A DNA stretch of 64,000 bases from Octopus sinensis (lineage: Eukaryota). The position numbers and the translations under genes were made by a program. The notes under the pieces are model-generated. The model ran no database searches, had not been told where the DNA came from, and saw only the letters and a list, made by a program, of their open reading frames with translations. Each line of letters starts with the position of its first letter. Positions within the stretch are counted from its first letter, which is position 1. The DNA lies in assembly GCF_006345805.1 (NCBI RefSeq), contig NC_042997.1, positions 197,532,001-197,596,000 of the forward strand, given 5' to 3'. Positions 29,455 to 53,653 of this stretch are shown piece after piece.

Positions 29455-29488
29455 CTAGAAAATAAAATAAAAAAAAAAAAAATTAATA

Positions 29489-29865
29489 TAGGCGCAGGAG
29501 TGGCTATGTGGTAAGTAGCTTGTTTACCAATCACATGGTTCTGGGTTCAGTCCCACTGCGTGGCACCTTGGGCAAGTGTCTTCTACTATAGCCTCGGGCC
29601 GACCAAAGCCTTGTGAGTGGATTTGGTAGACGGAAACTGAAAGAAGCCCGTCGTATATATGTATATATATATATGTATGTGTATGTGTGTGTGTTTGACA
29701 ACCGATGCTGGTGTGTTTATGTCCTCGTCACTTAGCGGTTCGGCAAAAGAGACCGATAGAATAAGTATTGGGCTTACAAAGAATAGTCCCGGGGTCTAGT
29801 TGCTCGATTAAAGGTGGTGCTCCAGCATGGCCACAGTCAAATGACTGAAACAAGTAAAAAAAAAA
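29489..29865 (+). mobile_element. tRNA-derived SINE, family B (GGCGCAGGAGTGGCTGTGTGGTAAG..., CORE-like GGCACCTTGGGCAAGTG, internal (TA)n/(TG)n)
   Basis: A/B-box-like head. Copies at 7955-8335 (-), 12150-12370, 28380-28970, 34245-34775 (-), 40430-41035, 47175-47390 (-), 48325-48790, 51900-52110, 57240-57650 (-) and 63100-63720 (-). Confidence 0.85.
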
Positions 29866-31622
29866 AAAAATTGCATGTATCTGTATGTAATAGACCCATC
29901 ACCAGACTTTGGTGCCTGGGTAGTGGTAATGGTAGTGGAAGGGAATGCGGCAAAGTCAAAGGTATTGATGGTGGTAGCAGGGGAAGTCTGAATCATCATC
30001 ATTGTTTAATGTCCGCTTTCCATGCTAGCATGGGTTGGACAATTTGACTGAGGACTGGCGAACCAGATGGCTGCACCAGGCTCCACTCTGATCTGGCAGA
30101 GTTTTTACAGCTGGATGCTCTTCCTAACGCCAACCACTCCGAGAGTGTAGAGGGTGCTTTTACGTGCCACTCAGGCGGTACTGGGAGGTGTGTATATTTC
30201 AGTTGTCATGGCAATGGTGGTGGTACAGGTGATGGTGATTGATGAAAACAATCAACAGAAAGAGAGAGAGAGAAAGAAAGGGGTTAGATAGATAAAAAAA
30301 AAAAATGTACTGACCCCTGAATGGGAAGACAAAAAACGTTTATCGTGCACCTTTGCAATAAGTTCTAAGTCGACAAATTATATAAATTGTTCATTGCTTT
30401 AAAAATATTGGTGAAGTTTAATAAAATTTAATATGTACTCAATGCATGAAGTATCGTTGTTGGGCCCAAGGCCCAAAGAAGAGCCCTCCACAGGAGCTAG
30501 CTTAAAAGCCATCTTATCGTGCAGCTTTTAAGCTAGTTTGTAATAATGCTAAAGAGGAATTTCAAATCAAGTGTATCACTGTAAATCTCAGGATATACCA
30601 CTGAATAGTGAGGGAGCAGTGCCCTCCAGTGTACTCCTCAGCATGATCCACATGGTGCTTAGGTGTTTCACTCATAAAGACACACATTGCCCAGTCTGGG
30701 TTTCAAACCTGTGGTCCCTCAACTGCAAGTCTGCTGCTCTAACCACTAGGCCATGTACCTCTACGTCCTTCCTAATGCCAACCACTTAACAGAGTGTGCG
30801 TGATGGTTTTCACATGCCACAAGCACAGGTACATTTACATAGCAACAGCACAGGTGTGTTAACACAGCACCAGCACTGGTGCTTTTTAAGTGGTACCGGC
30901 ACCTGAAAGGACAACCCTGTATGCATGGAAGACAGTGGTTTCCCTTAGCTCGAAGTATCTTATCAAGTACAGCAAATCGTCACATCTCCCAGTCTCTTAT
31001 CATTTCCTTAATGAGGCCCAGCGTCCGAAGATCCTTTCTCACCACTTCATCCTACGTCTTCCTGGGTCTACACTTTCCACAGGTACCCTCCATAATTAGA
31101 GCTCGGCACTTCTTTATGCTGCAACCAGCGCAGTTTTCTCTCTTGCACACAATACACACACACACATATATATATATACATATGGCAACCCTTCGGTATT
31201 GGTACACGCCATTCAACCAACATGACCTTCCCTCATGATATAGATAATGAGGCTAGACTGAAGAAAATGGGTGAATAACGACGTCTCTTCACTGTCACTC
31301 TCTAGACCAATACCGAAGGAATGTCGAATATATGTGCGTGTACTAACGAACAAAAGTATATATATTAAGCTAAGTCAACCTGCTAATAGATACAACTCTA
31401 TGTATTCAGTACTACTTCAATTCGATAGTACACTCACACGAGTGTACAAAAAGACGTACGTGTATATATATTTATAATTGCATTCTTATCTTATATGTAT
31501 TAAATTATAATGTATATATGCATGCTATTAAGGTTCTCAATTTTGTTAAATGAATAAATAAGTCAGCATTCTAATATCCGAAAGCTGATGAACCAACTAA
31601 ATTGTTTCTCCATTTTCTTATT

Positions 31623-31669
<47 letters not shown>

Positions 31670-31919
31670 TTGATTATAGTGGGACAGCGCCGGCTAAGGC
31701 GAATGTGAAGAATACGCACACATGGTGTTTAAGGTTAGAATTTAAGTTTAGGGTATCGAGTTTTTGTTACGCCGAAAACGAGTGGCGTGCGTGTCCTTTA
31801 CCGCTGCCCAATTTAAAACCCATGTGTTTATTAAAGATAAAAATTTAAAGACCCATTTCATTTTGAATAGATGAAGCAACTAGTCGGTCACAACCGGAAA
31901 ACTTTCGAGCTATTTTCTA

Positions 31920-32205
31920 TTGTCATCATCATCATTGTTCGACCGTGGTCGAGACAATGGAATTTACCATGCTACGCCAGACTTCACGGTCCATCATGGC
32001 ATTACGGAGGTCCTGTTGCTGGATGCCTGTATCCCTGGAGATTACATCAGGGTAGGAGAGTGTGCGCCCTCTGGTATTGCGAGTAGATGGCTTCCAGAGG
32101 AGAAGAGTAGAAATTACTTCTTTTTCAGCTCTACAACAATGTCCAGCAAACTGGACTCTTCTACCTTTCACAAGAAAATTTATTAATAAATGTGATATAT
32201 CTTGT
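31920..32205 (-). mobile_element. Second RTE-type LINE family, 3' end
   Basis: RRVQFAGHC.R...LLW.P...RGR..LSY...I.RDTG.....L..AM.DR.VW followed by a (GAT)n tail. Confidence 0.8.
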
Positions 32206-32836
32206 AGCAGTTTAAATGCAGAAACTAAGTACATTTAGTAGTTTTCGTTACCATTTTACAACTTACATTCTTTTACTTTAGTTTCAAAAAGATACTGAAA
32301 CAGGAAACAACTCCAAATAATTGGTTTTGTTTTAGATATAAGGCCAGCAATTTTAAGAAGGTGGCTGTTAGTCGATACTACGGACCTTAGTACTTGAGTG
32401 TGCTTTATTATCTTTCACTGTACATTCATCCCCCCGAGGAATGAAAAGGAAAGTTGACCTCGGTGGTATTTGAACTCAGAACGTAAAGAGCCGGTACATG
32501 TGCTTGCTGCAAGGAATTTATATACTAACGATCTAAATTTCAGATAAATTAGAGCGAGTGAGAATGGGTCGGAGAAGAAATGAGATACAATATGAGAATT
32601 AAAGCCTTCCACAAACCCTTGGATGAAAATAACATTGCAGTAGTAAGATGTAAATAAAGGGGGAAACCAATGATGAGAGCATGATTTGAAGCTGACAGAA
32701 CCCGATAAAAGTCTAGATTATTAGAATTAATTAATTAAAATTAAGCAATCAATGCATTGGATATACAAGTTAAACATTATATCTATAACTTAAAACAATT
32801 ACTTGCACTGATTTAAGCTATAATATAATTTCCTAC

Positions 32837-32981
32837 CTTCGTTAAAAGTGAGAGGGAATTCGTTCTCGACGGAATCACAAACCAAAACAGACGAGGAATG
32901 TGGTAAATTTTCCTCACATTTTGATGACGTAAACATTTTGTGCGAACAAACTTGTTCTTTTTTTGTTCTTTTGCTCTCCAT
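32837..32981 (-). CDS. ACTR8: ARP8 putative first coding exon (MESKRTKKEQ...PLTFNE)
   Basis: ATG preceded by an in-frame TGA; ends at a phase-1 GTAGGA donor that fits the 29454 acceptor (G+TA=Val). No recognisable homology; supported by splice phase only. Confidence 0.55.
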
Positions 32982-33964
32982 TCATTTGAAACTTTTTCAG
33001 AAACCCTCCTTGGGCAACAAGGTGCTTGATTTATATATACATGAAACTGATGATTTTTATTTTTTTCTAATTTACATATAAATGGGATTCTAAATTCTAA
33101 ATTGCTTTCAAGACTATCGAACATATTTATATTTGGTATTTTTTTTTTCGGTTGTCGTTACGTTCTGAGTTCAAATTCCGCCCAGGCCGACTTTGCCTTT
33201 CATCTTTTTGGGGTCGATAAATAAAGTACCAGTTTGGCACTGAGGTCGATGTAATCGACTTAATCCCGTTGTCTATCCTTGTTTGTCCTCTGTGTTTAGA
33301 CCATTGTAGGTAATAAAGAAATAGGTATTTTGTCTGTCGTTACGTTCTGAGTTCAAATTCCGCCGAGGTCGACTTTGCCTTTCATCCTTTCAGGGTCGAT
33401 AAATTAAGTACCAGTTTCGCACTGGGGTCAATGTAATCGACTTAATCCCTTTGTCTGTCCTTGTTTGTCCCCTCTGTGTTTAGCCCCTTGTGGGTAGTAA
33501 AGAAATAGGTATTTTGTCTGTCGTTACGTTCTGAGTTCAAATTCCGCTGAGGACGACTTTACCTTTCATCCTTTCGGGGTCGATAAATAAAGTACTAGTT
33601 CGCACGGGTCGATGTAATCGACTTAATCCCTTTGTTTGTCCCCTCTATGTTTAGCCCCTTGTGGGCAGTAAAGAAATACATATTTATATTTGGTATTTTA
33701 TACATTCATTAACGTTTATGTTGTGGTTTCAAATCCCGCTGAAGTCAACTTTGCCTTCCATTTTTTCAGGGTCAAAAAAAAAAAAAATCAGTGAAATAAC
33801 TATAGATTTAATATTGGGTAATCTTTCAGTTTAGGGTGCTTAAAAAAGTAAATAAAAATGAAGGGGGAAATACGAAGTGGGGATAAATAAGTCAACTGTT
33901 GTACAACGTAGATAGACCCCGGCTATAGCCACCAAAAAATGAAAGAAAGTCTTTTTTTTTTCTG

Positions 33965-34160
33965 GAATAGAATTCCTCCTTATGAATTCGTGTAAACATG
34001 ACAAATAAATTGTCCGATGTTCCAAACTCGCCGCAATTTTCTTTTCATCCGCATCCACATACTCTCCATATTTTACGTGTGGAGGTCCTCATTTGTGGGA
34101 TCTACAAAGTTCTGGTGTACAATCACTTTCTGAGTGAAGGTGCCACCATTTAGGCGTCAT
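33965..34160 (-). mobile_element. Merlin / IS1595 (ISXO2-like) DDE transposase fragment
   Basis: LNGGTFTQKVIVHQNFVDPTNEDLHT*NMESMWMRMKRKLRR then, after a frameshift, FGTS and SCLHEF; matches NFVDP..HTQ.IE..W...K and YL.EF. Confidence 0.8.
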
Positions 34161-35179
34161 TGTTATTTACTTTTTTAAACACTCTAAACTGAAAGATTAC
34201 CTTAATATTGATATAAAGCACCTTATATTCTTTTATTCTTTTACTTGTTTCAGTCATTTGACTGCGACCAGGCTTGAGCACCGCCTTTTGTTGAGCAAAT
34301 CGATTCCAGGACTTATTCTTTGGAAGCCTAGTTCTTATTCTATCGGTCTCTTTTATTGAACCGCTAAGTTACGGGGACGTAAACACACCAGCATCGGTTG
34401 TCAAGCGATGTTGAGGGGACAAACACAGACACACAAACATATATACACACATATCATCATCATCATCATCATCATCATCATCGTTTAACGTCCGCTTTCC
34501 ATGCTAGCATGGGTTGGACGGTTCAACTGGGGTCTGGCAAGCCAGGCCAGTCAGATTTGGCAGATATATATACACACATATATATATATATATATACAGG
34601 CAGATATACGATGGGCTTCTTTCAGTTTCCGTCTACCAAATCCACTCACAAGGCTCTGGTCGGCCCGAGGCTATAGTAGAAGACATTTACCCAAGGTGCC
34701 ATTCAGTGGGACTGAACCCGGAACCATGTGGTTGGTAAACAAGCTACTTACCACACAGCCACTCCTGCGCCTATGTAAACAAAATTATAATTGAAGAAGG
34801 CAAATAGAAAACCCATGTATATTAATTGTTGGTTTCTTTGTTGGTATATTAATTGTTGGTTAGGCAATAAATCACTTAATGAGAAAAAATCAGATGCAGC
34901 AGTCTTGATTTTTTATTTTCATATATAACATATATACCTGTACATCTTTTAAAACGTTGTCATTTTATGAGATTTTGCTGGCAAATTCTTTAATTAATAT
35001 AAACATTTATTAACACGAAAGAAAATTACCGAAGGTCTTTCATCTAATTCTTCCAAATCTTTCTGTTAAAACAGCATTGAAAACATATTCTGTTGTGTCT
35101 GGGGAGAGTCATTCTCTTTTGGTGCCTTATAATCTAACACACTCATCGGTAAAATTTTTGAGAATTTAAAAAATTTTTA

Positions 35180-37550: not shown

Positions 37551-38659
37551 ATCATCAAGAGTAACCATTTAGAAATATCAAATCGCTGACATATGAAATA
37601 CAAAGGTCCAGTTGTTTGTAGAGAACAAAGGATGATGAAATTAACTTTACACGTAACACTGCTTAATACATAAACACACTGTTTCATTATTCATTAACTT
37701 TGTGATGAAGGCTTATATAAATCTTTGCATTGTCTTGGCATTTTCATTCTTGTTAGGTTAATATTTATAGAATAATATTTTAAGTGATTTGCTTACAGTA
37801 AATAAACAAGTTATTTAGATTGTTTCAAACATAGTTATGCTTTATAAAAATGCTTCCAGCTGTCCTGTCAGATTGTATATGATTAAATAACAAATGAAGT
37901 TAGTTTCCACTCAGAAATGTGAAAAATAAAGGTTAATTTCTTGTTTTGTATTTAATTAATATCTTCATTAAATAATTAATAAACACTGCCTAAAACTCAA
38001 AGGAGCTGAAGTTAGTTTCCACTCAGAAATGTGAAAAATAAAGGTTAATTTCTTGTTTTGTATTTAATTAGTATCTTCATTAAATAATTACTAAACACTG
38101 CCTAAAACTCAAAGGAGCTGATGTTGGGATTCTACATCCTTCAAAAGTTCCATGCTTCTTAAAATTCACTGACATTACACCTGATGCACCCCCCACTTTT
38201 TTTGTAAAGAACTCATTCATGGTTCACTTCCTATGCATATTCTGTGTACAGTTCATGCATTTTTCTGACAAGTTGTAGTGCATCTGAGCACTGTATAAGC
38301 TAATTATTATATTATTTTAAGCAGAAATAAAATTTGCTTCAGTCAAGAATTAAAGATAAAACTTGCATAAGAAAGTATTTTCTTTCTCTTCTTGTTGTGG
38401 TGAGAGTCATTGACACCCCTGTGGGATTGGAAGAATGGACTAGTCGAACTCTAAAGAGCAGCATATTGGTTGAGATGAGAGAAGTCTCAAGTAATTTTAA
38501 ACACGTCGTCCCTGCTTTGTGAAATCTGCATCTCCAAGAAATACAACAATATAAAACCTCTGAAGTTGGTGTTATATCTATATGAAGGTTTTATCAAATT
38601 CAAGTTTGGGATCTTTAAAATATCAGAAAATCAGCTGCAGTTGCTTAAGAAAATCCAGG

Positions 38660-38803
38660 ATGGTAACCAGCTTGGATGATGTTAAATCCTTACGTTTCTG
38701 GAGGGCAAATGTTGCTGAATTTTTGGGTTCCGCCTTATTAGTCCTTATGGGTTGTGGATCATGTTCTCAGTGGAGCAAAGAGACCACACCTTCTGTGATT
38801 GAG
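38660..38803 (+). CDS. Aquaporin (MIP family, AQP4-like) exon 1
   Basis: MVTSLDDVKSLRFWRANVAEFLGS (TM1 AEF motif); GTAAGC donor. An upstream in-frame ATG at 38582 is an alternative start. Confidence 0.9.
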
Positions 38804-41149
38804 GTAAGCTCTATTTTAACCCATTTGTTACTATATAGTTATTGAAATTTACTGTGTTTCTTTCAGTCTATTTTGAAAATAACAAAGAATTTATTAAAAT
38901 AACTTTGACATTATTAAACTTGTCTCTTGAACATAAATTGACTTGAAATGTTGATGGAAGGACCTAACTTAGATCACTTTAACCCTTTCAATACCAACCC
39001 GACTGAAACTGCTTCTGGTTCTGTAGTACAAATATCTTGTTTTCATAAGTTCTGAATTAAAATCTTCCACAAACCTTAATCATAATTTATGTTCCTAACA
39101 CTAGCTTAATGATAACTAAGTCATTTCATAAATTCTTTGTTATATCTAAAATTAATTGAAAGTAACACAGAGCATCTCAACAGAAATATGGCAACAAAAG
39201 GTTAAAACAGGAAGTTTTTATTATAGTGCTAGGGATAATCTCAGATAATCAAATATCAAAAACTAAAATTCACTAATACAGAAATTTTTGCATAATCAAA
39301 ATTGTGTATGTGTAACATTTGCGCCCCACCTTTTTTTTCTCAAATTTTTTTTGATTCCTATGTTTTCAATATAGAAGATTAGGATTTTGCCCCAGAACCA
39401 CGCTTTCAAAATTTTAATTTTCCCCCTCCCCACCCCAATTTTTAAATTTCTAACTTTTTTCCAAAATTTTTTTTGATTCCTATGTTTTCAATATAGAAGA
39501 TCAGGATTTTACCCCAGAACCACGCTTTCAAAATTTAAATTTTCCTCCTGCCATTCAAATTTTAAACTTTTTCCCAAAATTTTTTTATAATCTTTATAGA
39601 AAAATACAGAGATTATGAATCTTTACGAATCTTTTCTAAAATTTTTCTCAAAGAAACACTCAACTCCCCTCCTCCAATCTCCACCCATCATCTCCCCACC
39701 TCACCCACCCGCCCACCCTCTTCCCGCTTTCAAAAAGCTAAAAACTCTGAATGTTTCACTTTCACCTACTGTTTCAACACATGTGTAGAATTCTACTGAA
39801 ATAGCAGACAGCAAAAATATCTGACCACCACCACCAGAAAATCCGACATACTAGAAACAACAGCTAAAAGAAATTTTTCTGAAAAAAACTTACTCACTTT
39901 CAAAAAAGCAAAAAGTAAAACATTCAGAGTTTTTAGTTTTTTGAAAGTGGGGAGATGATGGGTGGAGATTGGAAGAGGGGAGTTGAGTGTTTCTTTAAGA
40001 AAAATTTTAGAAAAGATTCGTAAAGATTTCTATGGCTGGATGGCCTTCCTAATGCCAGCCACTCCAAGAGTGTAATGAGTGTTTTTACATGCCACTGGTA
40101 TCTGCCATGGCTGTGATGGTCTGGCATGGCAGGAGACAGAGGATTGAGTGGCACAAGCTAGTTGGGCAGGAAGAAGAAGAAAGAAGAATTCTGTTCCTTC
40201 TGCTTCCCCAGCGTGCCCTTTCCTACGACTCCCACATTTATGTGGTGTTAAAAATTTCATTGCACCAACTGCAATCTGATCAAAGATGCAATTCTAATTC
40301 ATGAAATACTTGAAATCAGATCAGTGATCAATTCAGTTAGTGGAGCAAAAATTTTGACAGCAAATAATAAGTGCCGCTAGAGAAGTTAATAGTTTTTGTG
40401 TTTTCTTTTTGAATAGTTTTTGAATAGGCGTAGGAGTGGCTGTGTGGTAAGTTGCTTGGTTACGAACCACATGGTTCCGGGTTCAGTTCCACTGCATGGC
40501 ATCTTCAGCATAGCCTCGAACCGACCAAAGATTTGTGAGTGGATTTGGTAGATGGAAGCTGAAAGGTGGCGGGCCAGCAGAAACGTTATTACGCCGGGCG
40601 AAATGCTTAGTGGTATTTTGTCTGCCGCTACGTTCTGAGTTCAAATTCTGCCGAGGTCAAATTTGCATTTCATCCTTTCGGGGTTGATTAAGTAAGTACC
40701 AGTTATGCACTGGGGTTGATATAATCGACTTAATCTGTTTGTCTGTACCCTCTGTGTAGCCCCTTGTCAGCAGTAAAGAAATAGGAAACTGAAAGAAGCT
40801 CATCATATATATATATATATGTATATGTATGTATGTATGTGTGTGTGTATATGTTTGTGTGTCTGTGTTTGTCCCCTCAACATCGCTTGACAGCTGATGC
40901 TGGTGTGTTTATGTCGGCAAAATAGACTGATAGAATAAGTACTAGGCTTACAAAGAATAAGTCCTGGGGTCGATTTGCTTGACTAAAGATGGTGCTCCAG
41001 CATGGCCACAGCCAAATGACTGAAACAAGTAAAAGAGAGAGTTAAAGTGTAAAGAGAGTTAAATGTGTGTCTTCTACATTGTAATCGTTTTAGTTTCAAC
41101 TGAAGATAAAATCACATTCCTGGCAAGTACATATCTGAAATATATATTC

Positions 41150-41473
41150 GATTTTTATTTTGTTTTGGGATTTGGTTTGCAAGATTCTTTATATGATTTC
41201 GTGTGTTGAAGCATATTCTGTTGTCTGGGGAGAGTCATTTTCTTTTTGTGCCTTATTATGTAACACACTCACTGGTAAAATTTCCACTTTTTTTCTTATT
41301 TTTATTTTCCTAAAACTTTCGTTGCATCTTAAAAGACTATTGAAAAGGTTGCAAGACGCAACGAAAATTTCAGGAAAATAAAAATAAGAATTAAGTGGAA
41401 ATTTTACCGGTGAGTGTGTTACATTATAAGGCACAAAAAGAAAATGACTCTCCCCAGATGTAACAGAATATAT
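41150..41473. mobile_element. Long-TIR MITE (ATATTCTGTTGTGTCTGGGGAGAGTCATT family)
   Basis: Inverted arms of about 115 bp; partial copies at 10735-10960, 16600-16740 and 35085-35165. Confidence 0.78.
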
Positions 41474-41555
41474 ATTCTATGTTCTTTCTAAAAGCAACCA
41501 TAAATGTATTTCCATATGCAGTGATCATACTAAACATATTTTCTTTTTAATCTAG

Positions 41556-41951
41556 GTATCATTTGGTTTCGGCTTCACAATTGTGACTTTGGTGTGGATT
41601 TTTGGACAGACCAGTGGTGCTCATTTCAACCCTTCCGTGACATTGGCTCTGATGATAACTCGTAAGATCAGTTTTGTCCGTGCTGTATTTTACCTGATAT
41701 TTCAATCAGTTGGTGGAATTACAGGTGCTGCTCTTTTACTGTCGGTTCTTCCTAAGAATAAGACAGTAGATTTGTGTCCCACTGTTCTGGCAGAAGATGT
41801 AGGTGTTTTTCAAGGAATGTTAGTCGAGAGCTTCTTGGCTTTCTTCCTTGTGATGACTGTGTATGCCACTTCTGACACAAGACGCACAGACCACAAAGGA
41901 CCATTCCCACTTACGATCGGCATTGTTATAACGGCCTGTATTTTAATGGGA
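41556..41951 (+). CDS. Aquaporin exon 2
   Basis: VSFGFGFTIVTLVWIFGQTSGAHFNPSVT...CILMG; MIP signature SGxHxNP; TAG/GTAAGT; 132 codons. Confidence 0.96.
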
Positions 41952-42205
41952 GTAAGTATATATCATAGTAATAATACTATCACCATTGCAATCAGTAAAA
42001 TAATTTTACTCAAAATTATGTCTTTGTGACCTTGTTCCCATCTAAGTTGGGTTATTTATCATCAGCTAGATGCCCCACTGAGTCTAGATGTTGGCTTACC
42101 AAGACTCCCCCAATTCCCCCTGTCTTATGCTGTATGCATACAATCAGCCAGACTCCTGTTGTTACTCCATTCTTTGATGTCATCAAAATAACCAAATGCT
42201 AATGG

Positions 42206-42239
<34 letters not shown>

Positions 42240-42349
42240 TGTTTTTACCAATAAATTACCTTCCGAATGACGCTTTCTTCACTAAGAGCTTATACGGCTT
42301 TTTTGGATAATCGCCAGACATCGGTTCAGGACTCTAACACACAGAAGAA

Positions 42350-42415
42350 TTTAATATGGACGCCTATTACATAGATTATTCTATGAAAAACATACCAATA
42401 CCATCTGTATCTGTT
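42350..42415 (+). mobile_element. Possible tiny Penelope-like ORF relic
   Basis: FNMDAYYIDYSMKNIPIPS resembles the YSxKNIPIP motif I recall from Penelope-like ORF N-termini; very short. Confidence 0.3.
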
Positions 42416-42794
42416 ACAGATATATATATATATATATAATCCATAATAATAAAGGGTAAAATTAATTAATTAATTAATTAATTAATAATTAAACCAAGTA
42501 GTTCAGTATGTTAAAAGAACCATTATCGGTAAACTTATACATAAAATTTTATAATTATGAGTATAATTATAATAAGGGTTTAGCAAAAATTTACTTCACC
42601 ACATACCGAAATTTAGAAGTAGCAGTTAAAACTAACTATTTCACTACTATAAGTAAATCTCCCAGCTAGCAATACTCAACAACCCACCTGCATGAACCCT
42701 AATTATAATTAAACTCATAATTCTAAAATTTTATTATATATGTATGTATATATATATATATATATATATATCTGTGTATTGAATCTATTTTCAG

Positions 42795-42875
42795 GCAAAA
42801 TTTACTGGAGCTTCAATCAATCCTGTAAGATCCCTTGGGCCAGCTGTTGTTGGAGGAGTTTGGGAACACCATTGG
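42795..42875 (+). CDS. Aquaporin exon 3
   Basis: AKFTGASINPVRSLGPAVVGGVWEHHW; 81-nt exon at the intron positions known from AQP1/AQP4-type genes. Confidence 0.95.
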
Positions 42876-43698
42876 GTCAGTATAGTTACTTTTATGTTAT
42901 TTTATTGGGTGCAGACAAGGGCTACATTGTTAAAAGATTTACTTTACAACTACAGGTATGAGACCAACTTTCCAGGCACCGATGGTTCAGAACCTCTTAT
43001 AACCCACACTAATTTACAGATTAGAACTTCAAATTCCTGCATCTGCTATGCTAGTTGACTTGGTGGTGCTGTTTCACTGTACCGTGGATAGTACAGTTTT
43101 GTGATGTGAAGAAGAAAAAAGACAGAAGCAAAGAGAGAATTGCGGTAGTCTTAACTGTTGGTCCGGAAAAGGGTTGTTCTCAATGTCCATGTACTATGTC
43201 TCAATCTGCAAGATTCACTCAATGTCCATGTGTGCTGTCTGTCTAACGCACCTGCTCTTTGCCTCGACTGCTGCTTGCGCCTCACTGACCCCGCATGCCC
43301 ACCGCAGCCCTTCTGGTGGGACCCATATGCCTCACTTCCAGTCCTCCCCTACAACGCAACTTGGCTCATAACATCACAAGGTTTAATAAATTTGCTTCAT
43401 TTGTACCAATGTACAGGTACCTGTATTTCATTTAACTTAAATAAATTTAATATTAGTTTCATTTAGAAGTGACCACTTCTGGTTTGGAAAAATCAGTGAT
43501 CTGAAGTAGCCTTGGAATAAAAGGTTCTAGAAAAATCAATATTGCACCTGTATATTTTGTTCCTGGTTCAATCAAAAAGGTAAACATGGAGTAAGAGACT
43601 TTGTTGTTTGGAAATAAATATCGACAGTAGCTTTGAAGCGGAAACATTTTAAAGATTTAAAAATTTAATTCTCTCTTTCTTTTTTCTTTTTGGTGCAG

Positions 43699-43920
43699 AT
43701 ATACTGGCTGGGACCCATTTTCGGTGGAATTTTAGGGGGCATTCTTTATGACAATCTGTTTGCTGTGAATGCGTCCCTGATGAAGGCAAGGGCTTGTTTC
43801 ATGACAAGTGATTATAATGGAGAAAGATTTGATCCACAAAGAGTGAAGATCAGGATAATGGAAGAAGAATCCATTTTCAGGGCACCACTTGCAGAACCCG
43901 AAGAATTATACATGTCCTGA
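43699..43920 (+). CDS. Aquaporin exon 4
   Basis: IYWLGPIFGGILGGILYDNLF... to TGA; typical TM6 YWxGP motif. Confidence 0.94.
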   Translation: MYWLGPIFGGILGGILYDNLFAVNASLMKARACFMTSDYNGERFDPQRVKIRIMEEESIFRAPLAEPEELYMS

Positions 43921-45729: not shown

Positions 45730-46919
45730 GACTATGAAGTTACACTCTCTGTTAGGTGGCACAAGTACTTACACACTCAGTGGTAACTTCTGCCTACTGA
45801 ATTCAATTGCAAAGTTTTGGTCAGCAGAAGACTCTTGCCCAAGTTGCCACACAGTGGGATTGAACCTGAAACCATGTGAGCAGGAAGCAAGCTTCCTAAC
45901 CACACAGCCATGCCCATGCCTTTACACATTCAATCAAAAATCTAAAAGTTATTGTATTTTTAAACAACAATGTTGTGATACCAGTGCCAGTGGCACGTAA
46001 AAGAACTGGCACGTAAAAGAACTGGCACGTAAAAGAACCATCTGAACGTGGCCGTTGCCAGCGCCACCCCAACTGGCCTCCGTGCCGGTGGCACATAAAA
46101 AGCACCAACCAATTGTGGCCGTTGCTAGCCTCACCTGGCACGTAAAAAGCACCCACTACACTCACTGAGTGGTTGGCATTAGGAAGGGCATCCAGCTGTA
46201 GAAACACTGCCAAATCAGACTGGAGCCTGGTGCAGCCTCCTGGCTTCCCAGACCCCAGTCGAACCATCCAGGCCATGCTAGCATGGAAAACGGATGTTAA
46301 ACGATGATGATGATGATGATGAATGTTACATCACAAAATTTAAGAATTCAAAACATAGAACTAGTTTCCTTGAATATATTTTTCTCCACTCACACACAAA
46401 AAAAAATTACAAGGCAGATGGCTAAACGGATGAAGCAATTTATTTAATTAATCTAAGCATGAGAAAATCAAGATGTAGGAATGTAAAATGGTGAAAAATC
46501 CAAAGCAAAATACATCGTTAAGTGTGAAGTAGATAACACTGTTTGCCATGTACTTCAATGAAGAAGAATTTAAAATATTTGCAAAGAAATATTACATAGT
46601 AATTCATAAACTAGTTGATAGTTTTAATTGTTGTATGTGTGTATGCATGTGAGTTTATATCAACATTAATCATCAACTTAAAAATATATTTTTAATTTAT
46701 TAAGAATAACCTGATTGAGTTCATTCATATATGTATCACCTTTCAAAATAGTTGCATTGGGCTGAAAAGCTCTGGCTTTAAATATTCTAAATTTTATGTG
46801 TTCAAAAAATTTTTTTTTTGTACTGTATAAAATTTAAAGCTGTTAGTTTGTATGAGTGCATATGTATATACGTGGTGTATGTGTGTGTAATATTATTCAG
46901 ACCTGATATTGGTAATAAC

Positions 46920-47079
46920 TCATAACTCTAGTGTGGTGGTGCACTGTTTCATAGCATTATATATCAGAGTATTGTTGAAAGGCACGAATTGTCCAGTAAT
47001 TATTTTGATGGCTTCTTGAGACATTACTCCACCCATGTATGCAGCAATAGAATGCAGCTCTGATGCACCGTAGCGGCAC
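46920..47079 (-). CDS. NAE1: NAE1 last exon [17 protein letters not shown]...[12 protein letters not shown]...TTLEL*
   Basis: Matches CRYGAAEPHTIAAFLGG...QEVIKIIT; TGA stop. Confidence 0.96.
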
Positions 47080-47790
47080 CTAAATAATTAGAAAAATAAG
47101 AAACATTATGATTAATAAGAAGAATAAAACTAAACTGAAAGAAAGTAAAAAAAAGGAACATAGCCACACTCTTTTACTCTTTTCAGTCATTTGACTGCGG
47201 CCATGCTGGAGCACCGCCTCTAATCGAGCAAATCGACCCCAGGACTTATTCTTTGGAAGCCTAGTACTTATTCTATCGGTCTCTTTTGTTTAACCGCTAA
47301 GTTACGGGGACGTAAACACACCAGCATCGGTTGTCAAGCGATGTTGCGGGGACAAGCACAGACACACAAACATATACACACACGTATATGTTTTACTTAC
47401 TGTATTAACTCATCTATAAATTGTATATTATTATATAGTTGATTTTAACTGGAAAACTGGTGGGAGGGCAGAGCTAAAAGTATTTTGTATCAAGATTTGA
47501 CCCCAAATTAGGGGTGTGATTTATACATGAGTAAATATAATAATTCTTCATTATCTTAAAAATTAAATGAAACAAAAGCAGTTGATTTCAACAGAAACCA
47601 ATAGAATAAGTATTAGGCTTCCAAAGAATAAATCCTGGGGTCGGTTTGCTCAACTAAAGGCAGTGCTCCAGCATGGCCGCAACCAAATGACTGAAACAAG
47701 TAAAAGATTTGACTTCTCCACTGTAGAACATGCAACCATTTGTTATTTGATGGAATCGTTTTGACAGGTAAAAATAATTGATTGACTTAC

Positions 47791-47864
47791 ATTTCGTGAA
47801 TATAATCATCTTTGATCAAAGTAGATGAGAGGCCTAATTCCATGAGGAGCTTGCTAACGTGTGT
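47791..47864 (-). CDS. NAE1: NAE1 exon THVSKLLMELGLSSTLIKDDYIHE
   Basis: Matches VKDDYVHEF; phase 2. Confidence 0.93.
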
Positions 47865-48491
47865 CTGGAACAAAATTAAATAAAAAAAAACGTAAGTTAG
47901 AATAATAATAAATGTTTCTAATTCTGGGACAAAATCAGCAATTTTGGAGAGAAGCGGTTTAGTAGACAGCATTGAACCCCAGTACTTGACTGGTACCTTA
48001 TTTTATGAACCTCAGAGGGAAGAAGGGTAAAGTTGACCTCTGTGGGATTTTAATGTAAAATGTAAAGAACTGGAAAAAATATTGCAAGGCATTTTATTTG
48101 ATGCTCAAACAATTCTAACAATTTATCTGCCCTTGATCTTGTAGTGAGGGATTTGAAATGGAACCCTGGGATATGCAATCGGACATCATGAGCAAAACAC
48201 AATTGTTTCAGGCAATCGGTCTGTTTGGTAATCAATCAGCATAAAGTCATTGTGTGAGTCATTGACTGAGTAAACTAATGATAAAAAACATTCCAGCTGT
48301 GTCCATCCGATCTTTTGTAGTCATATGGCACAGGAGTGGCTGTGTGGTAAGTAGCTTGCTAACCAACCACATGGTTCTAGGTTCAGTCCCACTGTGTGGC
48401 ATCTTGGGCAAGTGTCTTCTGCTATAGCCCCGGGCCGACCAATGCCTTGTGAGTGGATTTGGTAGACAGAAACTGAAAGAAGCCCGTCGTA

Positions 48492-48579
<88 letters not shown>

Positions 48580-49751
48580 TTGTGTGTCTGTATTTGTCCC
48601 CCTAGCATTGTTTGACAACCGATGCTGGTGTGTTTACGTGCCCGTCACTTAGCGGTTCGGCAAAAGAGACCGATAGAATAAGTACTAGGCTTACAAAGAA
48701 TAAGTCCCGGGGTCGATTTGCTCGACTAAAGGCGGTGCTCCAGCATAACCACAGTTACGTGACTGAAACAAGTAAAAGAGTAAAAGAGAGTATATGGTGT
48801 CACTTGCTTCCAGTTCTGTGCATAAGACATGTCCAGGTTGTTTGTTATTCGATAGACCGGGAGACCATTACCTTGCTTGGAAACAAGTGGGGATTAGTGT
48901 TAGGAACATGGCATCTGGCTGTCAAAAGCTCTGCCCCAACATACTCTTGTATAAGACCCATGCAAGACTGGAGAAGCAGATATTAACCCTTTTGTTACTG
49001 TATTTATTTTGTGATGCTCTGTGTTTCTTTCAATTACTTTAAATATTACAAAGAATTTAGTAAAATAACTTCATCATCATCGTTTAACGCCCGCTTTCCA
49101 TGCTAGCATGGGTTGGACGATTTGACTGAGGACAGGTGAACTAGATGGTTGCACCAGGCTCCAATCTTGATCTGGCAGAGTTTCTACAGCTGGATGCTCT
49201 TCCTAACGCCAATCACTCCGAGAATGTAGTGGGTGCTTTTATGTGCCACCGGCACGAGGGCCAGTCAGGCGGTACTGGCAACGGCCACGCTGAAATGGTG
49301 TTTTTTTACGTGCCACCTGCGAAGGAGCCAGTCCAGCAGCACTGGCAACAACCTCTAGTTATCATTAAGCTAGTGTTAGGAGCATTAATTGTGACCAAGG
49401 TTTGGTGGAAGATTTTAATTCAAAACTTATGAAAACAAGACATTTGTACTGAGAGCCAGAGCTGGCTCCAACCAGGTTGGTAGCGAAAGAGTTAAACAAT
49501 GAGGAAGTTGATGATAATGATGATGATGTGTCTCTTTGTTTTTAAAGATGATAAAGTCTGAATTGATGGAATTTGACTTGTATTTCTTGCAGATCCCTTG
49601 AACATGAAGTGGATCCCACACTGGGATGACTTTAACAATAAGAAAGGAAGGAGATGATAATAAATGTGAGAAAGTTGTAAAGGCTGAAATTAAATACAGA
49701 ATATGATTAACAAGTGAAAAGTGACTAATTAATTAATATAGCAAATATTAC

Positions 49752-49891
49752 CTTTAATTTAAAAACGTCCCCTTCTACTTGATCATCATACCAGCCTGGG
49801 TAGCGGCTGTACTCTTCAAAGAAACGTTCGGCAGCTCGCAGCATGAGATAAAACACGATATCACTGTCTTCTTCATCTCCAAGCTGGAGTC
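49752..49891 (-). CDS. NAE1: NAE1 exon LQLGDEEDSDIVFYLMLRAAERF...DVFKLK
   Basis: Matches EIVLYLMLRAVDRF...RYPG...DIGKLK. Confidence 0.95.
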
Positions 49892-50029
49892 CTGGAAATA
49901 CATACAAATGTCAGGGGCAAAGTCATTATAAATATCAACCCTCCTTGTTAATTTAATCTCAAATCTCAGTGCAAAACTTTTGTTATCGCATGTGGCAGCA
50001 CACCCAATACAAGAACAACCATATGCCAC

Positions 50030-50323
50030 GTCGCCATGATAGATCGTTAGCCACTACACACATTTTTTTCTCTCCTTATTTTTTCTGTGTCCTTTTCTGT
50101 AGAAGAGCGTAAGCTCGAAACATAAAAGACTTTTTCTATTCCTGAGCGTTATACTAATACATCTGTTTGTTTTGTACACCACCTGTCTTCGGCTTTTGTA
50201 TTTTTTTTGTAAACTCTCCCTATATATATATATCATCATCATCGTTTAACGTGCACTTTTCATGCTAGCATGGGTTGGACGATTTTGATTGAGGGCTGGC
50301 GAACCAGATGGTTGCACCAGGCT

Positions 50324-50368
<45 letters not shown>

Positions 50369-50534
50369 AAGCCGAAGACAGGTGGTGTACAAAACAAACA
50401 GATGTATTAGTATAACGCTCAGGAATAGAAAAAGTCTTTTACGTTTCGAGCCTCCGCTCTTCTACAGAAAGGGACACAGAAAAAACAAGGAGAGAAAAAA
50501 ATGTGTGTAGTGGCTAACGATCTATCATGGCGAC
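50030..50534. repeat. Inverted pair (167-bp arms) of Penelope-like ends carrying variant hammerhead cores
   Basis: Arms at 50030-50196 and 50368-50534 enclose (TA)n and an RTE tail. Confidence 0.85.
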
Positions 50535-50701
50535 TCTTAATTAAGATCCCTTTAAACTAGGAAAATTTTTTCATCAAACCAAGGATAGTCTAAGCCGGGC
50601 TGATGTCAAAAGGATTAAAGATTAAGAGCAGATATCTCTTCTAGCCTTAAAGAAAACAAAAAAGTTTTTTGCTTAGTTAAAAATGTTAATAATTTTGATA
50701 C

Positions 50702-50785
50702 CTTCTTGAATCTGTGCACTTTTGGGATCATATTCTTCTGCCAAACTTCTGCAGTGAATCACTCGTAAAAAGCTTCCGTTTTTAC
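50702..50785 (-). CDS. NAE1: NAE1 exon KNGSFLRVIHCRSLAEEYDPKSAQIQE
   Basis: Matches SNSAFLRVVRCRSLAEEY. Confidence 0.94.
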
Positions 50786-51442
50786 CTGAAACATTTACAG
50801 TGATAGGTTGGTCATTAAGGGTATTATAAAGATACTTATATTTGTTTGTCTAATTCAGAGAAGCAACATCAATAAGGCCAAATCCATCACAAATACATGT
50901 AATAATTCATCATCATCATCATCGTCCAACTTCTCAAGCACTACATAATGCTAAAGGTTCTGATCATTGCCTCCATGAGGCCCAGCACTCAAAACGTGCT
51001 TTTTATGTGCCACTCTCAGAGTGGTTGGCATTAGAAAGGGCATCCAGCCGTAGAAACTATGCCAGATCAAGATTGAGGCCTGGTGCAGCCGTCTGGTTCG
51101 CCAGTCCCCAGTCAAATCGTCCAACCCATGCTAGCATGGAAAGTGGACGTTAAACCATGATGATGATGATGATGAAAATTGATCCAACTACAGGCAGTGA
51201 CATTGCTGTTATTCTCCTGGTTGATAGGTAGTCTGCTGGCTGTGCACTTTTGAAAACATGTGGAATAAGATATTCCTTACTTGGAAAAAAATGTAAGGGT
51301 GAGTGACAGGAAAGGCCTCACTAATATGTTCATCTAATCCATGCAAGCACACAAAAATGGAAGTGGAAAACAAATGAAAGAAAAAATTATTTGCTGAGAG
51401 TCGAAGTAGACAGAGATGAGCAAAGTATTTTTAAATACTTAC

Positions 51443-51482
51443 AAAATAATTTTACATCTTGTTCAGTGATGCTGCAATATGG
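51443..51482 (-). CDS. NAE1: NAE1 40-nt exon PYCSITEQDVKLF
   Basis: Matches PESISEKELKLL; phases 0/1 link the flanking exons. Confidence 0.88.
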
Positions 51483-52390
51483 CTACAAAAGGAAAGAAAA
51501 AGATAAACATTTATTAAAGAGATTAAAAAAGAAGAAGTGTGGTTTAAATTCAACTGAAACAAAATGAAATCAAATGTTTTGCTCAAGGACATAAAACACT
51601 GCCTGACCTGAGAATTGAACCCACATCCTAATGACTGAAACCAACACCCAAACTATACCACATGCTTTCACTTGAAGAAGTTCACAAAACAAAAAGTATC
51701 GTATTTTAACGTGTATAAGGAGCCCCCTAATTTTTGGGGCTTAAAATTTGGAAAAAAGGTTTTGTAAGGGATCATAATACTATCCATGTATAAGAAACTC
51801 CCATATTTTTTTTAACCGAATTTTTGACAAAAAAGGGTTTCTTATACATATTAAAATATGGTAAATACAAAGTTCAAGTGTAATGTATGTTTAAACATAT
51901 AGGCACAGTCATGGTTGTGTAATAAGAAGCTTGCTTTTCAACCACATGGTTCCAGGTTCAATCTCACTGTGTGGCATCTTGGGCAAGTGTCTTCTACTAT
52001 AGCCTTGGGCCAACCAAAGCCTTGTGAGTGGATTTCAGAGACAGAAACTGAAAGAAGCTTGTCGTATATATATATATATATATATGTTTGTGTGTCAGTG
52101 TTTGTCCCCCCACCAAAAGTATCATATTTTAACATGTATAAGGAACCCTCTAATTTTTGGGGCTTAAAATTTGGAAAAAAGGTTTTGCAAGGGATCATAA
52201 TACTATCCATGTATAAGAAACTCCCATATTTTTTTAACTGAATTTTTGACAAAAAAGGGTTCCTTATACATGTTAAAATATGGTAAATATAAAGTTCAAG
52301 AGTGAAAAAGTAATATGACATTAACTCCAATACACAAGAAAAAACAAAACAAAACTAAGAAAAAAAACCCCTGAAAAAACTGATAATGAC

Positions 52391-52539
52391 CTTTCCAATT
52401 TTCTGCAGAATGTTCTGGACACGATGGAGGATATTAGTAACATCTTTATGTGCTTGCTCTCTGTAGATGTTCTGCAACTGAATATAACGGTTAGAATCTG
52501 CTGTCATATCAGGAATCGTACCTCTCAAAGGTAGAGCAC
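52391..52539 (-). CDS. NAE1: NAE1 exon ALPLRGTIPDMTADSNRYIQLQNIYREQA...KIGK
   Basis: LPxRGTIPDMxADS hallmark of NAE1. Confidence 0.96.
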
Positions 52540-53592: not shown

Positions 53593-53653
53593 TTTTGCCT
53601 TCGTTCTCAGTAAATTCTTTCATGGCGTGCAGCATGATCCAGAAGTTTTTGCT
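53593..53653 (-). CDS. NAE1: NAE1 exon SKNFWIMLHAMKEFTENEGK
   Basis: Matches SFWILARALKEFVAKEGQG; phase 1. Confidence 0.92.

What the first reader, a model, noticed from the sequence alone, without database searches (positions are those of the whole stretch)
38660..43920. AQP4-type aquaporin with both NPA motifs altered (NPS, NPV) and the ar/R His replaced by Ile
Seen: loop B HFNPS (41628-41636), loop E SINPVR (42819-42830), and TM5 TACILMG (Ile at 41940-41942) where AQP4 has AIGHLFA. The filter reads F/I/A/R. Exon positions are those of classical water channels. Knowledge: AQP4 uses F/H/A/R, and insect entomoglyceroporins gained glycerol permeability by replacing this His with an uncharged residue. 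Inference: a possible independent cephalopod route to a solute-permeable (glycerol, urea, ammonia or H2O2) or intracellular channel.
Basis: partly seen in the sequence, partly recalled or inferred. Interest (0 to 1): 0.7.

Follow-up and report, generated by a model that had tools for sequence, protein, structure and literature searches.

The report
Octopus aquaporin with altered pore filter

Summary
Window 38582-43920 (+) holds a four-exon, GT-AG gene. It encodes the 306-aa Octopus sinensis protein that NCBI names "aquaporin AQPAe.a" (100% identity). Loop B reads NPS, loop E reads NPV, and the ar/R filter reads F-I-A-R. It is a classical, AQP4-grade MIP, not AQP8-type.

The changes are old and maintained. 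Three Octopus species share them. Two Sepia species also have NPS and Ile, but their loop E reads SPI, so the second Asn is lost. dN/dS is 0.22-0.30 in both lineages.

The interpretation needs tempering. Gastropod malacoglyceroporins, which are tandem duplicates of the His-type gene, carry the same F-I-A-R filter with NPC, NPS or NPG and NPV or NPI variants. Oyster Aqp4L1, mussel Aqpc3 and fish Aqp14 also have Ile on TM5.

My trees cannot decide between convergence and orthology to the snail clade. ML favours a His-type placement by 2.0 lnL (RELL 0.59 vs 0.41; NJ bootstrap 54% vs 23%).

Ile is bulky, so the filter resembles archaeal AqpM (F-I-S-R: low water and very low glycerol permeability) more than insect Eglps (Ala/Ser). 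A glycerol route is therefore not the best guess. The function is untested.

The parts
38582..38803 (+).
   Evidence: Translation equals P0001/XP_029641054.1. The donor is GTAAGC. The upstream CLRKSR-M motif is shared with Sepia and gastropods. pLDDT is below 50 for residues 1-26.
41556..41951 (+). Coding exon 2 (396 nt, aa 75-206): TM2 with ar/R Phe79 (41568-41570), loop B HFNPS (NPS at 41628-41636), TM3, TM4, loop D RRTDHKG, and TM5 with Ile203 (41940-41942).
   Evidence: alignment to AQP4. AG acceptor and GTAAGT donor.
42795..42875 (+). Coding exon 3: the 81-nt exon typical of classical aquaporins (aa 207-233). It holds Ala212 (42810-42812), NPV (42819-42827) and Arg218 (42828-42830).
   Evidence: The same 27-codon exon occurs in Solea AQP4 and in Haliotis paralogs. 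It is also described for oyster classical AQPs (PMC8925068).
43699..43920 (+). Coding exon 4 (aa 234-306 plus TGA at 43918-43920): TM6, a short C-terminal helix (aa 260-268), and the conserved tail SDYNGERFDPQRVKIRIMEEE.
   Evidence: tail conserved with His-type lophotrochozoan orthologs; helix 260-268.
38804..41555 (+). Intron 1, a cephalopod-lineage intron absent from Haliotis and vertebrate AQP4 genes. It is full of dispersed repeats and two long hairpins (39618-39699/39947-40028 and 41224-41314/41368-41458).

Best explanation
The locus is a functional single-copy gene of Octopus sinensis. It encodes a classical (AQP4-grade) aquaporin of the lophotrochozoan group that contains the 'lophotrochoaquaporins' and malacoglyceroporins. 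In the coleoid lineage, before Octopus and Sepia split, its pore was remodelled. The TM5 His of the ar/R filter became Ile, giving F-I-A-R. The Ala of the first NPA became Ser. The second NPA became NPV in Octopus and SPI in Sepia.

Inferred mechanism: the protein still folds and tetramerises as a normal MIP, and it keeps the Arg, the first Asn and the backbone-carbonyl ladder. The constriction loses its only polar side-chain donor besides Arg, so it becomes more hydrophobic and only slightly wider. By analogy with AqpM (F-I-S-R), this predicts reduced water permeability and little glycerol flux. It favours small, weakly polar or neutral species such as NH3, H2O2 or dissolved gases rather than polyols.

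What is shown: sequence, gene structure, orthology group, conservation, purifying selection, transcription in Sepia, and a confident MIP fold. What is inferred: permeability, and whether the change was convergent with or inherited together with the gastropod malacoglyceroporins. Trees lean weakly to convergence.
For: - Identity and family: Pfam MIP 8.2e-67. Best solved relatives are AQP4 at 2e-55, then AQP2, 5, 0 and 1, with GLPs at 1e-10 to 1e-13. The AF2 model has pLDDT 87.8 and pTM 0.83, with six TM helices and two half-helices starting at the NPS and NPV motifs. Foldseek top hits are AQP2/5/0/4, with TM-score 0.89-0.96 normalised by target.
- Not AQP8-type: the H2 position is Phe, not His. 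AQP8-like snail proteins score 5e-33 and 7e-28, against 1e-83 to 1e-85 for classical molluscan relatives. They also sit across a branch of 1.1 substitutions per site in the ML tree.
- Derived and old: 17-sequence alignment. Octopus and Sepia are monophyletic in 100% of NJ bootstraps.
- Maintained: dN/dS is 0.22-0.29 for O. sinensis vs O. bimaculoides and 0.22-0.30 for S. esculenta vs S. pharaonis.
- Expressed: the Sepia ortholog is indexed in 82 blocks of the public-assembly collection. All carry contigs under 2 kb, and the 8 places shown are Logan RNA-seq contigs with an intronless CDS. Run identities come from PMC10141105 and PMC5541922.
- No better His-type ortholog in annotated Octopus proteomes: in a profile search with 12 His-type orthologs, the only named Octopus hit in the top 120 is this gene.
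- Placement: ML favours the base of the His-type clade over the Mglp stem by 2.0 lnL, with likelihood-weight ratio about 0.92 vs 0.07 and RELL 0.59 vs 0.41. NJ bootstrap gives 54% vs 23%.
- Functional analogy: AqpM Pf is 57 um/s vs 330 for AqpZ, with glycerol permeability far below GlpF (PMC3287591).
Against: - No permeability, localisation or expression data for the octopus protein were available. No octopus RNA-seq contig encoding the exact protein is on record.
- dN/dS of about 0.25 shows constraint but is not tight, so partial relaxation is possible.
- Loss of the second NPA Asn in Sepia fits poorly with a conventional conducting pore.
- AQP4 and AQP1 respond differently to identical ar/R mutations (PMC6937295), so predicting selectivity from four residues is unreliable.
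- Four pore and loop sites (96, 187, 203, 212) together favour common ancestry with snail Mglps by about 13 lnL units. The 'convergent' part of the story may therefore be wrong.
- I could not compute a pore profile because model coordinates are not exposed.
Confidence: 0.6

Rival explanations
1. The cephalopod gene is a true ortholog of the gastropod malacoglyceroporins. Under this reading, the tandem duplication that produced the His-type and Ile-type copies predates the cephalopod-gastropod split. Cephalopods kept only the Ile-type copy, and Ile, SGA, TDH-G and the non-Ala NPA1 are inherited rather than reinvented.
For: - Shared states with the Mglp clade: Ile203, His187 in loop D, Ala96, Ala212, RSLGP, and a non-Ala third residue in NPA1 (NPC, NPS or NPG).
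- Mglp-clade members also show NPG/NPV (Gigantopelta P0280) and NPS/NPI (P0162).
- The first NJ tree put cephalopods sister to Haliotis 'classical aquaporin 6', as did the full-data 61-taxon NJ tree.
- RELL support is 0.41.
- Only one gene occupies the octopus locus, whereas Haliotis rubra has H, Ia and Ib in tandem.
Against: - ML prefers the His-type placement by 2.0 lnL. NJ bootstrap for Mglp is only 23% and was 35% in the first tree.
- The signal comes almost wholly from four pore or loop sites that could be functionally coupled.
- The literature and my searches find Mglps only in gastropods (PMC8925068). Under the usual molluscan tree this reading therefore needs extra losses in bivalves and loss of the His-type copy in cephalopods.
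- The N-terminal MVTSLDD motif and the C-terminal SDYD...KIRIIEE tail match the His-type clade, although these may be retained ancestral states.
Confidence: 0.3
2. The pore is no longer a working channel. Selection is partly relaxed on the filter, and the protein is kept for a non-transport or gated role such as adhesion, scaffolding, regulation of partner proteins or central-pore ion conduction. Proposed parallels are Drosophila Big brain and lens AQP0.
For: - Sepia has lost the Asn of the second NPA (SPI). That residue is nearly invariant: N215 is among the columns conserved at 90% or more in the 97-sequence alignment.
- Many otherwise conserved pore-adjacent positions changed at once in cephalopods.
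- The cytoplasmic termini are better conserved than the filter relative to other molluscs.
- dN/dS of about 0.25 is not very low.
Against: - Arg218, the first Asn, the Gly/Ser carbonyl ladder and the helix-packing glycines are intact.
- dN/dS over the MIP core (0.20) is no higher than over the tails (0.23-0.43).
- Plant NIP5;1-type channels work with NPS/NPV (own knowledge).
- The fold is predicted with very high confidence through both half-helices.
Confidence: 0.1

Closest known systems
Gastropod malacoglyceroporins (Mglp; Kosicka et al. 2016; Jia & Liu 2022, abalone 'classical aquaporin 6' QIJ55384.1)
   Same: Both are classical-AQP derived. Phe is kept and the TM5 His is replaced, with F-I-A-R in most members. 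Both have the SGA-H/Q-x-NP loop B, the TDH-G loop D and RSLGP. Both show variant NPA third residues (NPC, NPG, NPS; NPV, NPI). Identity to the octopus protein is 44%.
   Different: Mglps are tandem extra copies next to a retained His-type gene (Haliotis rubra; Nucella adjacent locus tags). Octopus has a single gene at the locus, and no better His-type ortholog was found. Cephalopods keep the His-type N-terminal and C-terminal motifs. Orthology is unresolved. The literature treats Mglps as gastropod-only (PMC8925068).
His-type lophotrochozoan classical aquaporins ('lophotrochoaquaporins', Calcino et al. 2019, PMC6796509)
   Same: These are the best overall sequence matches (45-50% identity, E 1e-73 to 1e-85). 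They share the MVTSLDD start, the charged loop D R-x-D and the SDYD..K.KIRIIEE tail. ML and NJ give them the preferred placement.
   Different: They have F-H-S/A-R with SGGHINPA. Their second motif is NPA, NTA, NVA or NSA, never NPV or SPI. That the proteins I call His-type are Calcino's lophotrochoaquaporins is inferred from taxon overlap (Dreissena, unionids, Helobdella) and was not checked sequence by sequence.
Insect entomoglyceroporins (Eglp; Finn et al. 2015, PMC4518291)
   Same: Both are AQP4-related water-channel lineages in which the TM5 His is replaced by an uncharged residue.
   Different: Eglps mostly carry small Ala or Ser (73% of 207), keep NPA/NPA (own knowledge) and are shown to carry glycerol. 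Here the residue is bulky Ile, both NPA motifs are altered, and there are no functional data.
Archaeal AqpM (F62-I187-S196-R202)
   Same: It has nearly the same filter chemistry: Phe, Ile, a small residue and Arg. PDB entries 2evu and 3ne2 match at 2e-16 and 9e-16.
   Different: It is only distantly related, has NPA/NPA and is prokaryotic. Its measured behaviour (low Pf, very low glycerol, not an H2S channel; PMC3287591) is an analogy, not a prediction by descent.
Vertebrate Aqp14, oyster Aqp4L1 and mussel Aqpc3 (A-I-G-R)
   Same: All are classical-grade aquaporins with Ile on TM5 (P0186 is Astyanax Aqp14; PMC8925068; PMC12771848).
   Different: They also replace the TM2 Phe by Ala, which widens the filter. 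The cephalopod protein keeps Phe.

Membership tests
MIP / aquaporin superfamily (PF00230) | Significant match to the MIP profile over the full domain | tested here: met
   E 8.2e-67, 225.7 bits against a cut-off of 25, covering profile positions 2-222 of 222.
MIP / aquaporin superfamily (PF00230) | Six TM helices plus two re-entrant half-helices that begin at the NPA-type motifs | tested here: met
   In the AF2 model (pLDDT 87.8), helices 100-108 and 216-226 start right at NPS and NPV. TM-score to AQP0, AQP4 and AQP2 structures is 0.9-0.96.
MIP / aquaporin superfamily (PF00230) | Two canonical Asn-Pro-Ala motifs | tested here: not met
   The motifs are NPS and NPV in Octopus, and NPS and SPI in Sepia. 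Asn-Pro is kept in Octopus. The third residue is known to vary in accepted family members.
Classical (AQP1/AQP4-grade) water channels | Closest to AQP0/1/2/4/5 rather than AQP8, GLP or AQP11/12 grades | tested here: met
   PDB ranking. AQP8-like snail proteins are about 50 orders of magnitude weaker and sit as a distant outgroup. No AQP11/12 reference sequence was compared directly.
Classical (AQP1/AQP4-grade) water channels | Conserved 81-nt exon encoding loop E, with the same flanking intron positions | tested here: met
   Exon 42795-42875. The same boundaries occur in Solea AQP4 and Haliotis.
Classical (AQP1/AQP4-grade) water channels | ar/R filter F-H-(A/C/S)-R with His on TM5, the basis of water selectivity | tested here: not met
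   The filter is F-I-A-R. It therefore belongs to the grade by descent, but the hallmark of strict water selectivity is absent.
Classical (AQP1/AQP4-grade) water channels | High, solute-excluding water permeability | not testable with these tools
   This needs oocyte or liposome assays.
AQP8-type (aquaammoniaporin) | His at the TM2 (H2) position with Ile on TM5, and grouping with AQP8/TIP | tested here: not met
   H2 is Phe79. Lymnaea and Biomphalaria AQP8-like proteins (H-I-A-R) score far lower and are outgroups.
Malacoglyceroporins (Mglp) | Classical-AQP descent with Phe retained and the TM5 His replaced (as summarised in PMC8925068) | tested here: met
   F-I-A-R, identical to Haliotis, Littorina, Babylonia and Nucella members.
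Malacoglyceroporins (Mglp) | Monophyly with the gastropod Mglp clade | tested here: inconclusive
   ML dlnL is 2.0 against. RELL is 0.41 for and 0.59 against. NJ bootstrap is 23% for. Pore sites favour it and terminal sites oppose it.
Malacoglyceroporins (Mglp) | Origin as a tandem duplicate beside a retained His-type gene | tested here: not met
   There is one MIP gene in the 64-kb window and in the O. bimaculoides locus, which lies between actin-domain and ThiF-domain genes.
Malacoglyceroporins (Mglp) | Glycerol permeability | not testable with these tools
   No assay was possible. The primary papers (Kosicka 2016; Jia & Liu 2022) are not in the library.
Entomoglyceroporins (Eglp) | Member of the hexapod Eglp clade | tested here: not met
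   The protein is from a mollusc. The insect Prip/Drip sequences included form a separate clade in the ML tree. No bona fide Eglp sequence was in my tree.

The most novel reading that the evidence does not exclude
Coleoid cephalopods may have converted their only copy of the lophotrochozoan His-type water channel, rather than a spare duplicate, into a hydrophobic-filter channel. In cuttlefish the second NPA asparagine is then removed at the mRNA level (AAT in Octopus, AGT in all Sepia transcripts). If the Sepia genome still encodes AAT, this would be near-complete A-to-I recoding of the most conserved residue of an aquaporin pore. That would be an RNA-editing switch on channel selectivity.
Probability: 0.07. 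Interest if true: 0.8.

Novelty: new variant of a known kind. Interest (0 to 1): 0.4.

Why it matters
If the permeability is really shifted, cephalopods would be a further animal lineage in which an AQP4-type water channel was re-tuned by replacing the filter histidine. Insects, gastropods, bivalves and teleosts are the lineages already known. Cephalopods may have done this without keeping a water-selective twin of that gene.

Cephalopods excrete ammonia and are mostly osmoconformers, and some store ammonium for buoyancy. A hydrophobic-filter aquaporin is therefore a reasonable candidate for NH3, H2O2 or gas handling.

The Octopus NPV versus Sepia SPI contrast offers a natural pair for testing how much the second NPA asparagine matters. 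The finding does not open a new class of system. The gene is already annotated, and the type of substitution is described in other molluscs.

Tried and rejected
- AQP8-type membership is rejected: H2 is Phe, the scores are far lower, and AQP8-like proteins fall as an outgroup.
- Pseudogene or assembly artefact is rejected: the frame is intact, the splice sites are canonical, three Octopus species agree, and dN/dS is about 0.25.
- A tandem paralog in the window was not found. tblastn finds only the four exons plus one E=0.039 scrap at 21919-22038.
- Intron positions and indels were tried as rare markers to decide between His-type and Mglp affinity. They are uninformative. Haliotis H and I copies share the same two introns, and there are no clade-specific indels in the core.
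- Finding octopus transcripts for expression or editing failed. No Logan contig encodes the exact protein.
- The Nucella I-type locus could not be fetched.
- Jia & Liu 2022 and the Kosicka primary papers are not in the library.
- A review of aquatic lens biology was checked for a cephalopod lens aquaporin and had nothing relevant.
- A pore-radius profile was not possible because the structure tool returns no coordinates.
- My ML analysis uses a home-made implementation: a Gonnet-derived rate matrix with four gamma categories, NNI on a 57-taxon backbone, then placement. It should be treated as indicative, not definitive.

Full report
WHAT IS THERE

The exons are 38660-38803, 41556-41951, 42795-42875 and 43699-43920. 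All have GT-AG borders and all introns are phase 0.

An in-frame ATG 78 nt upstream, at 38582, extends the protein to 306 aa. This longer protein is identical to NCBI XP_029641054.1, 'aquaporin AQPAe.a [Octopus sinensis]'. The longer form is probably the real one. The extension ends in CLRKSR-M, a motif also present in frame in Sepia transcripts (NCLRRWR-M) and in gastropod orthologs.

The protein matches Pfam MIP at 8e-67. Its closest solved relatives are AQP4 (2e-55), then AQP2, AQP5, AQP0 and AQP1. Aquaglyceroporins are some 40 orders of magnitude weaker.

AlphaFold2 with a 97-sequence alignment gives pLDDT 87.8 and pTM 0.83. The model has six TM helices, two half-helices that begin at NPS and NPV, a disordered N-terminus (residues 1-26) and a short C-terminal helix. 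Foldseek against the PDB returns AQP2, AQP5, AQP0, AQP4 and AQP1, with TM-scores of 0.89-0.96 normalised by target.

CHECKING THE OBSERVATION

- NPS at 41628-41636
- NPVR at 42819-42830
- Ile at 41940-41942

The HMMER alignment to rat AQP4 puts Ile on His201, Phe79 on Phe77, Ala212 on Ala210 and Arg218 on Arg216. The filter is F-I-A-R.

In a panel of 253 relatives, 213 have NPA in loop B, 200 have NPA in loop E and 115 have His on TM5. Sixteen have both NPA motifs altered, and seven of those are cephalopod sequences.

The exon claim is two-thirds right. The introns flanking the 81-nt loop E exon coincide exactly with those of Solea AQP4 and of Haliotis genes. Octopus intron 1 is lineage-specific, and the vertebrate loop-C intron is missing.

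IS IT REAL AND MAINTAINED?

O. vulgaris differs by one residue and O. bimaculoides by 18 (94% identity). All three keep NPS, NPV and Ile. The O. bimaculoides locus is collinear with the window. It has the same four exons and lies between an actin-domain gene and a ThiF-domain gene.

dN/dS between the two octopus genes is 0.22-0.29, and 0.20 over the MIP core.

A 276-aa ortholog (61% identity) appears in RNA-seq assemblies as intronless contigs. The index lists it in 82 blocks of the collection. The run accessions trace to Sepia esculenta larvae and Sepia pharaonis. Sepia also has HFNPS and ACILMG. Its loop E reads G-I-S-P-I-R, so the Asn of the second NPA is Ser (codon AGT, against octopus AAT). 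The two Sepia species give dN/dS of 0.22-0.30.

The remodelled filter therefore predates the Octopus-Sepia split and is under purifying selection in both branches.

WHERE IT BELONGS

It is not AQP8-type. The H2 residue is Phe. Snail AQP8-like proteins (H-I-A-R) score 5e-33 and 7e-28, against about 1e-85 for classical molluscan proteins. They sit across a 1.1 substitutions-per-site branch in my ML tree.

The best matches (45-50% identity) are a lophotrochozoan group that I call His-type. It includes Lottia, Aplysia, Haliotis, Patella, Solemya, Dreissena, unionids, a chiton and the annelid Owenia. All have SGGHINPAVT and T-M-C-H-L-F-A. They share with the octopus protein the MVTSLDD start and the SDYD..KY..K.KIRIIEE tail. 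By taxon content this looks like the 'lophotrochoaquaporin' clade of Calcino et al. (PMC6796509).

THE TWIST

The full-library search turned up Haliotis discus hannai 'classical aquaporin 6' (QIJ55384.1), which has NPC/NPA and F-I-A-R. Searching with it revealed a gastropod clade: Haliotis (two paralogs), Gigantopelta, Littorina, Babylonia, Nucella, Batillaria, Candidula and Elysia. Lymnaea and Physella members were identified.

This clade carries SGA[HQ]xNP[C/G/A], loop D TDHxGS, T-M-D-I-P-W-A (Ile at the His position) and RSLGP. These are the same departures that mark the cephalopod protein. Gigantopelta even has NPG/NPV, and a heterobranch-like sequence (P0162) has NPS/NPI.

In Haliotis rubra the His-type gene and two Ile-type genes lie head to tail within 63 kb. 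In Nucella the two types have adjacent locus tags.

The literature calls these proteins malacoglyceroporins. They have Phe kept and His replaced, are reported only from gastropods, and in abalone arose by tandem duplication (PMC8925068, citing Kosicka 2016, Colgan & Santos 2018 and Jia & Liu 2022).

Ile on TM5 also occurs in oyster Aqp4L1 and mussel Aqpc3 (A-I-G-R; PMC8925068, PMC12771848) and in vertebrate Aqp14.

ORTHOLOGY OR CONVERGENCE?

I built a 61-taxon alignment (252 columns) and a maximum-likelihood engine with Gonnet-derived rates and four gamma categories. I optimised a 57-taxon backbone with NNI and then placed the cephalopod clade on every branch.
- The best placements are at the base of the His-type clade.
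- The Mglp stem is 2.0 lnL worse.
- Likelihood weights are about 0.92 vs 0.07.
- After full re-optimisation, RELL support is 0.59 vs 0.41.
- NJ bootstrapping gives 54% His-type, 23% Mglp and 23% elsewhere.
- An earlier 167-taxon NJ tree paired cephalopods with abalone Mglp at 35%.

Per-site likelihoods show a clean conflict. Sites 203, 187, 96 and 212, all pore or loop positions, favour Mglp by about 13 lnL. N- and C-terminal sites plus Cys61, Cys202 and Asn252 favour His-type by a similar amount. Introns and indels do not help.

A profile built from 12 His-type proteins finds no named Octopus protein scoring better than this gene itself. Octopus therefore seems to have this gene in place of a His-type copy, not alongside one.

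Reconciliation parsimony favours convergence: one gastropod duplication against an older duplication plus several losses. Shared derived residues favour common descent. I put convergence at roughly 60-65% and orthology at 30%.

HOW IT PROBABLY WORKS

The scaffold is intact. This includes Arg218, the first Asn, the loop B and loop E carbonyl ladders, and what I take from family knowledge to be AQP-type Froger residues (S, A, Y, W; not tabulated here).

What changes is the chemistry of the constriction. The only polar side chain besides Arg is replaced by a branched aliphatic residue of similar bulk. This differs from the insect Eglp solution, in which 73% of 207 channels use Ala or Ser and H201A/S makes AQP4 glycerol-permeable (PMC4518291; PMC6937295).

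The best-studied F-I-x-R channel is archaeal AqpM. Its filter is 'slightly wider and more hydrophobic' than in strict aquaporins. Its Pf is about one-sixth that of AqpZ, its glycerol permeability is far below GlpF, and it is not an H2S channel (PMC3287591).

I therefore expect a slower water channel with little polyol flux and possibly better passage of NH3, H2O2 or gases. NPS/NPV as such does not preclude function, since plant NIP5;1-type channels have it (own knowledge). Loss of the Asn in Sepia is harder to reconcile with a conventional pore and keeps a non-channel rival alive at about 10%.

All of this is inference. AQP1 and AQP4 respond differently to identical filter mutations, so only assays will settle it.

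RNA EDITING

The octopus codons for Ser101 (TCC) and Val217 (GTA) each differ from an Ala codon at a single position. The differences are G-to-T and C-to-T, not A-to-G. The Ile203 codon (ATT) differs from the His codons at two positions. None of the three can be an editing product.

The Sepia Ser codon (AGT against octopus AAT) is the one difference that could be A-to-I recoding. All eleven Sepia contigs show G.

The four nucleotide differences seen among S. esculenta contigs are all A/G, and one recodes I36V. Without Sepia genomic sequence this stays open. A plain substitution is much the likelier explanation.

VERDICT

The gene is already annotated, and the class of change is known in other molluscs, insects and fish.

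What is new is modest:
- a coleoid-wide F-I-A-R channel with both NPA motifs altered;
- apparently occupying the place of the His-type gene rather than duplicating it;
- with cuttlefish going further by losing the second Asn.

Noticed in passing
L001-L009, L011-L012 (Sepia transcripts); corresponds to window 42819-42821: Sepia esculenta and S. pharaonis orthologs read SPI instead of the second NPA. The Ser codon is AGT where Octopus has AAT. This is either a genomic substitution or A-to-I recoding of the pore asparagine.
   Followed up: partly
L001-L004 coding regions: All four nucleotide differences among S. esculenta RNA-seq contigs of this gene are A/G, and one recodes Ile36 to Val. This is compatible with RNA editing or with ordinary transition polymorphisms.
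   Followed up: partly
Proteins P0004-P0012, P0015, P0017-P0019, P0128 (related loci, not the window): The His-type gastropod and bivalve orthologs replace the Pro of the second NPA (NTA, NVA, NSA), while chiton, Dreissena and annelid members keep NPA. This is an unusual and apparently widespread motif variant.
   Followed up: no
window 39618-39699 / 39947-40028 and 41224-41314 / 41368-41458: Intron 1 holds two long inverted repeats (82 nt at 98% and 91 nt at 86% complementarity). The second ends about 100 nt upstream of exon 2. They look like MITE-type insertions and would form long dsRNA in the pre-mRNA.
   Followed up: partly
window 3524-5053 (-): A 509-aa ORF with a reverse-transcriptase domain (RVT_1, 1.4e-28) and a weak PHD finger. 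It is a retrotransposon fragment, probably non-LTR.
   Followed up: partly
window 2442-3499 (+): In a GC-rich stretch (53% GC in the 2001-4000 block), three overlapping frames stay open for about 290-320 codons and encode repetitive peptides (GAFTCHRHGA...). There is no Pfam hit. It looks like a tandem or satellite-like repeat. Related copies recur at 20284-20790 and 58919-59419.
   Followed up: no
window ~29000-34200 and ~46600-53800: Blocks of 81-95% identity to O. bimaculoides lie outside the aquaporin gene. They correspond to the neighbouring actin-domain gene and ThiF-domain gene, both on the minus strand in that species' annotation. Many short dispersed repeats (about 170-400 bp) are scattered through the whole window, including intron 1 (40424-41037).
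   Followed up: partly
P0025 (Sepia RNA-seq contigs): A 183-aa product reads through the donor after ...CILMG (GTAAGT read as Val-Ser). These are intron-2-retaining transcripts, and they show that the intron position is conserved between Sepia and Octopus.
   Followed up: partly
L013-L015 (Haliotis rubra QXJH01000057.1, 1.21-1.28 Mb): Three aquaporin genes lie head to tail: His-type (33 kb, with a 32-kb intron), then two Ile-type malacoglyceroporin paralogs. This is a compact example of duplication followed by filter change.
   Followed up: partly
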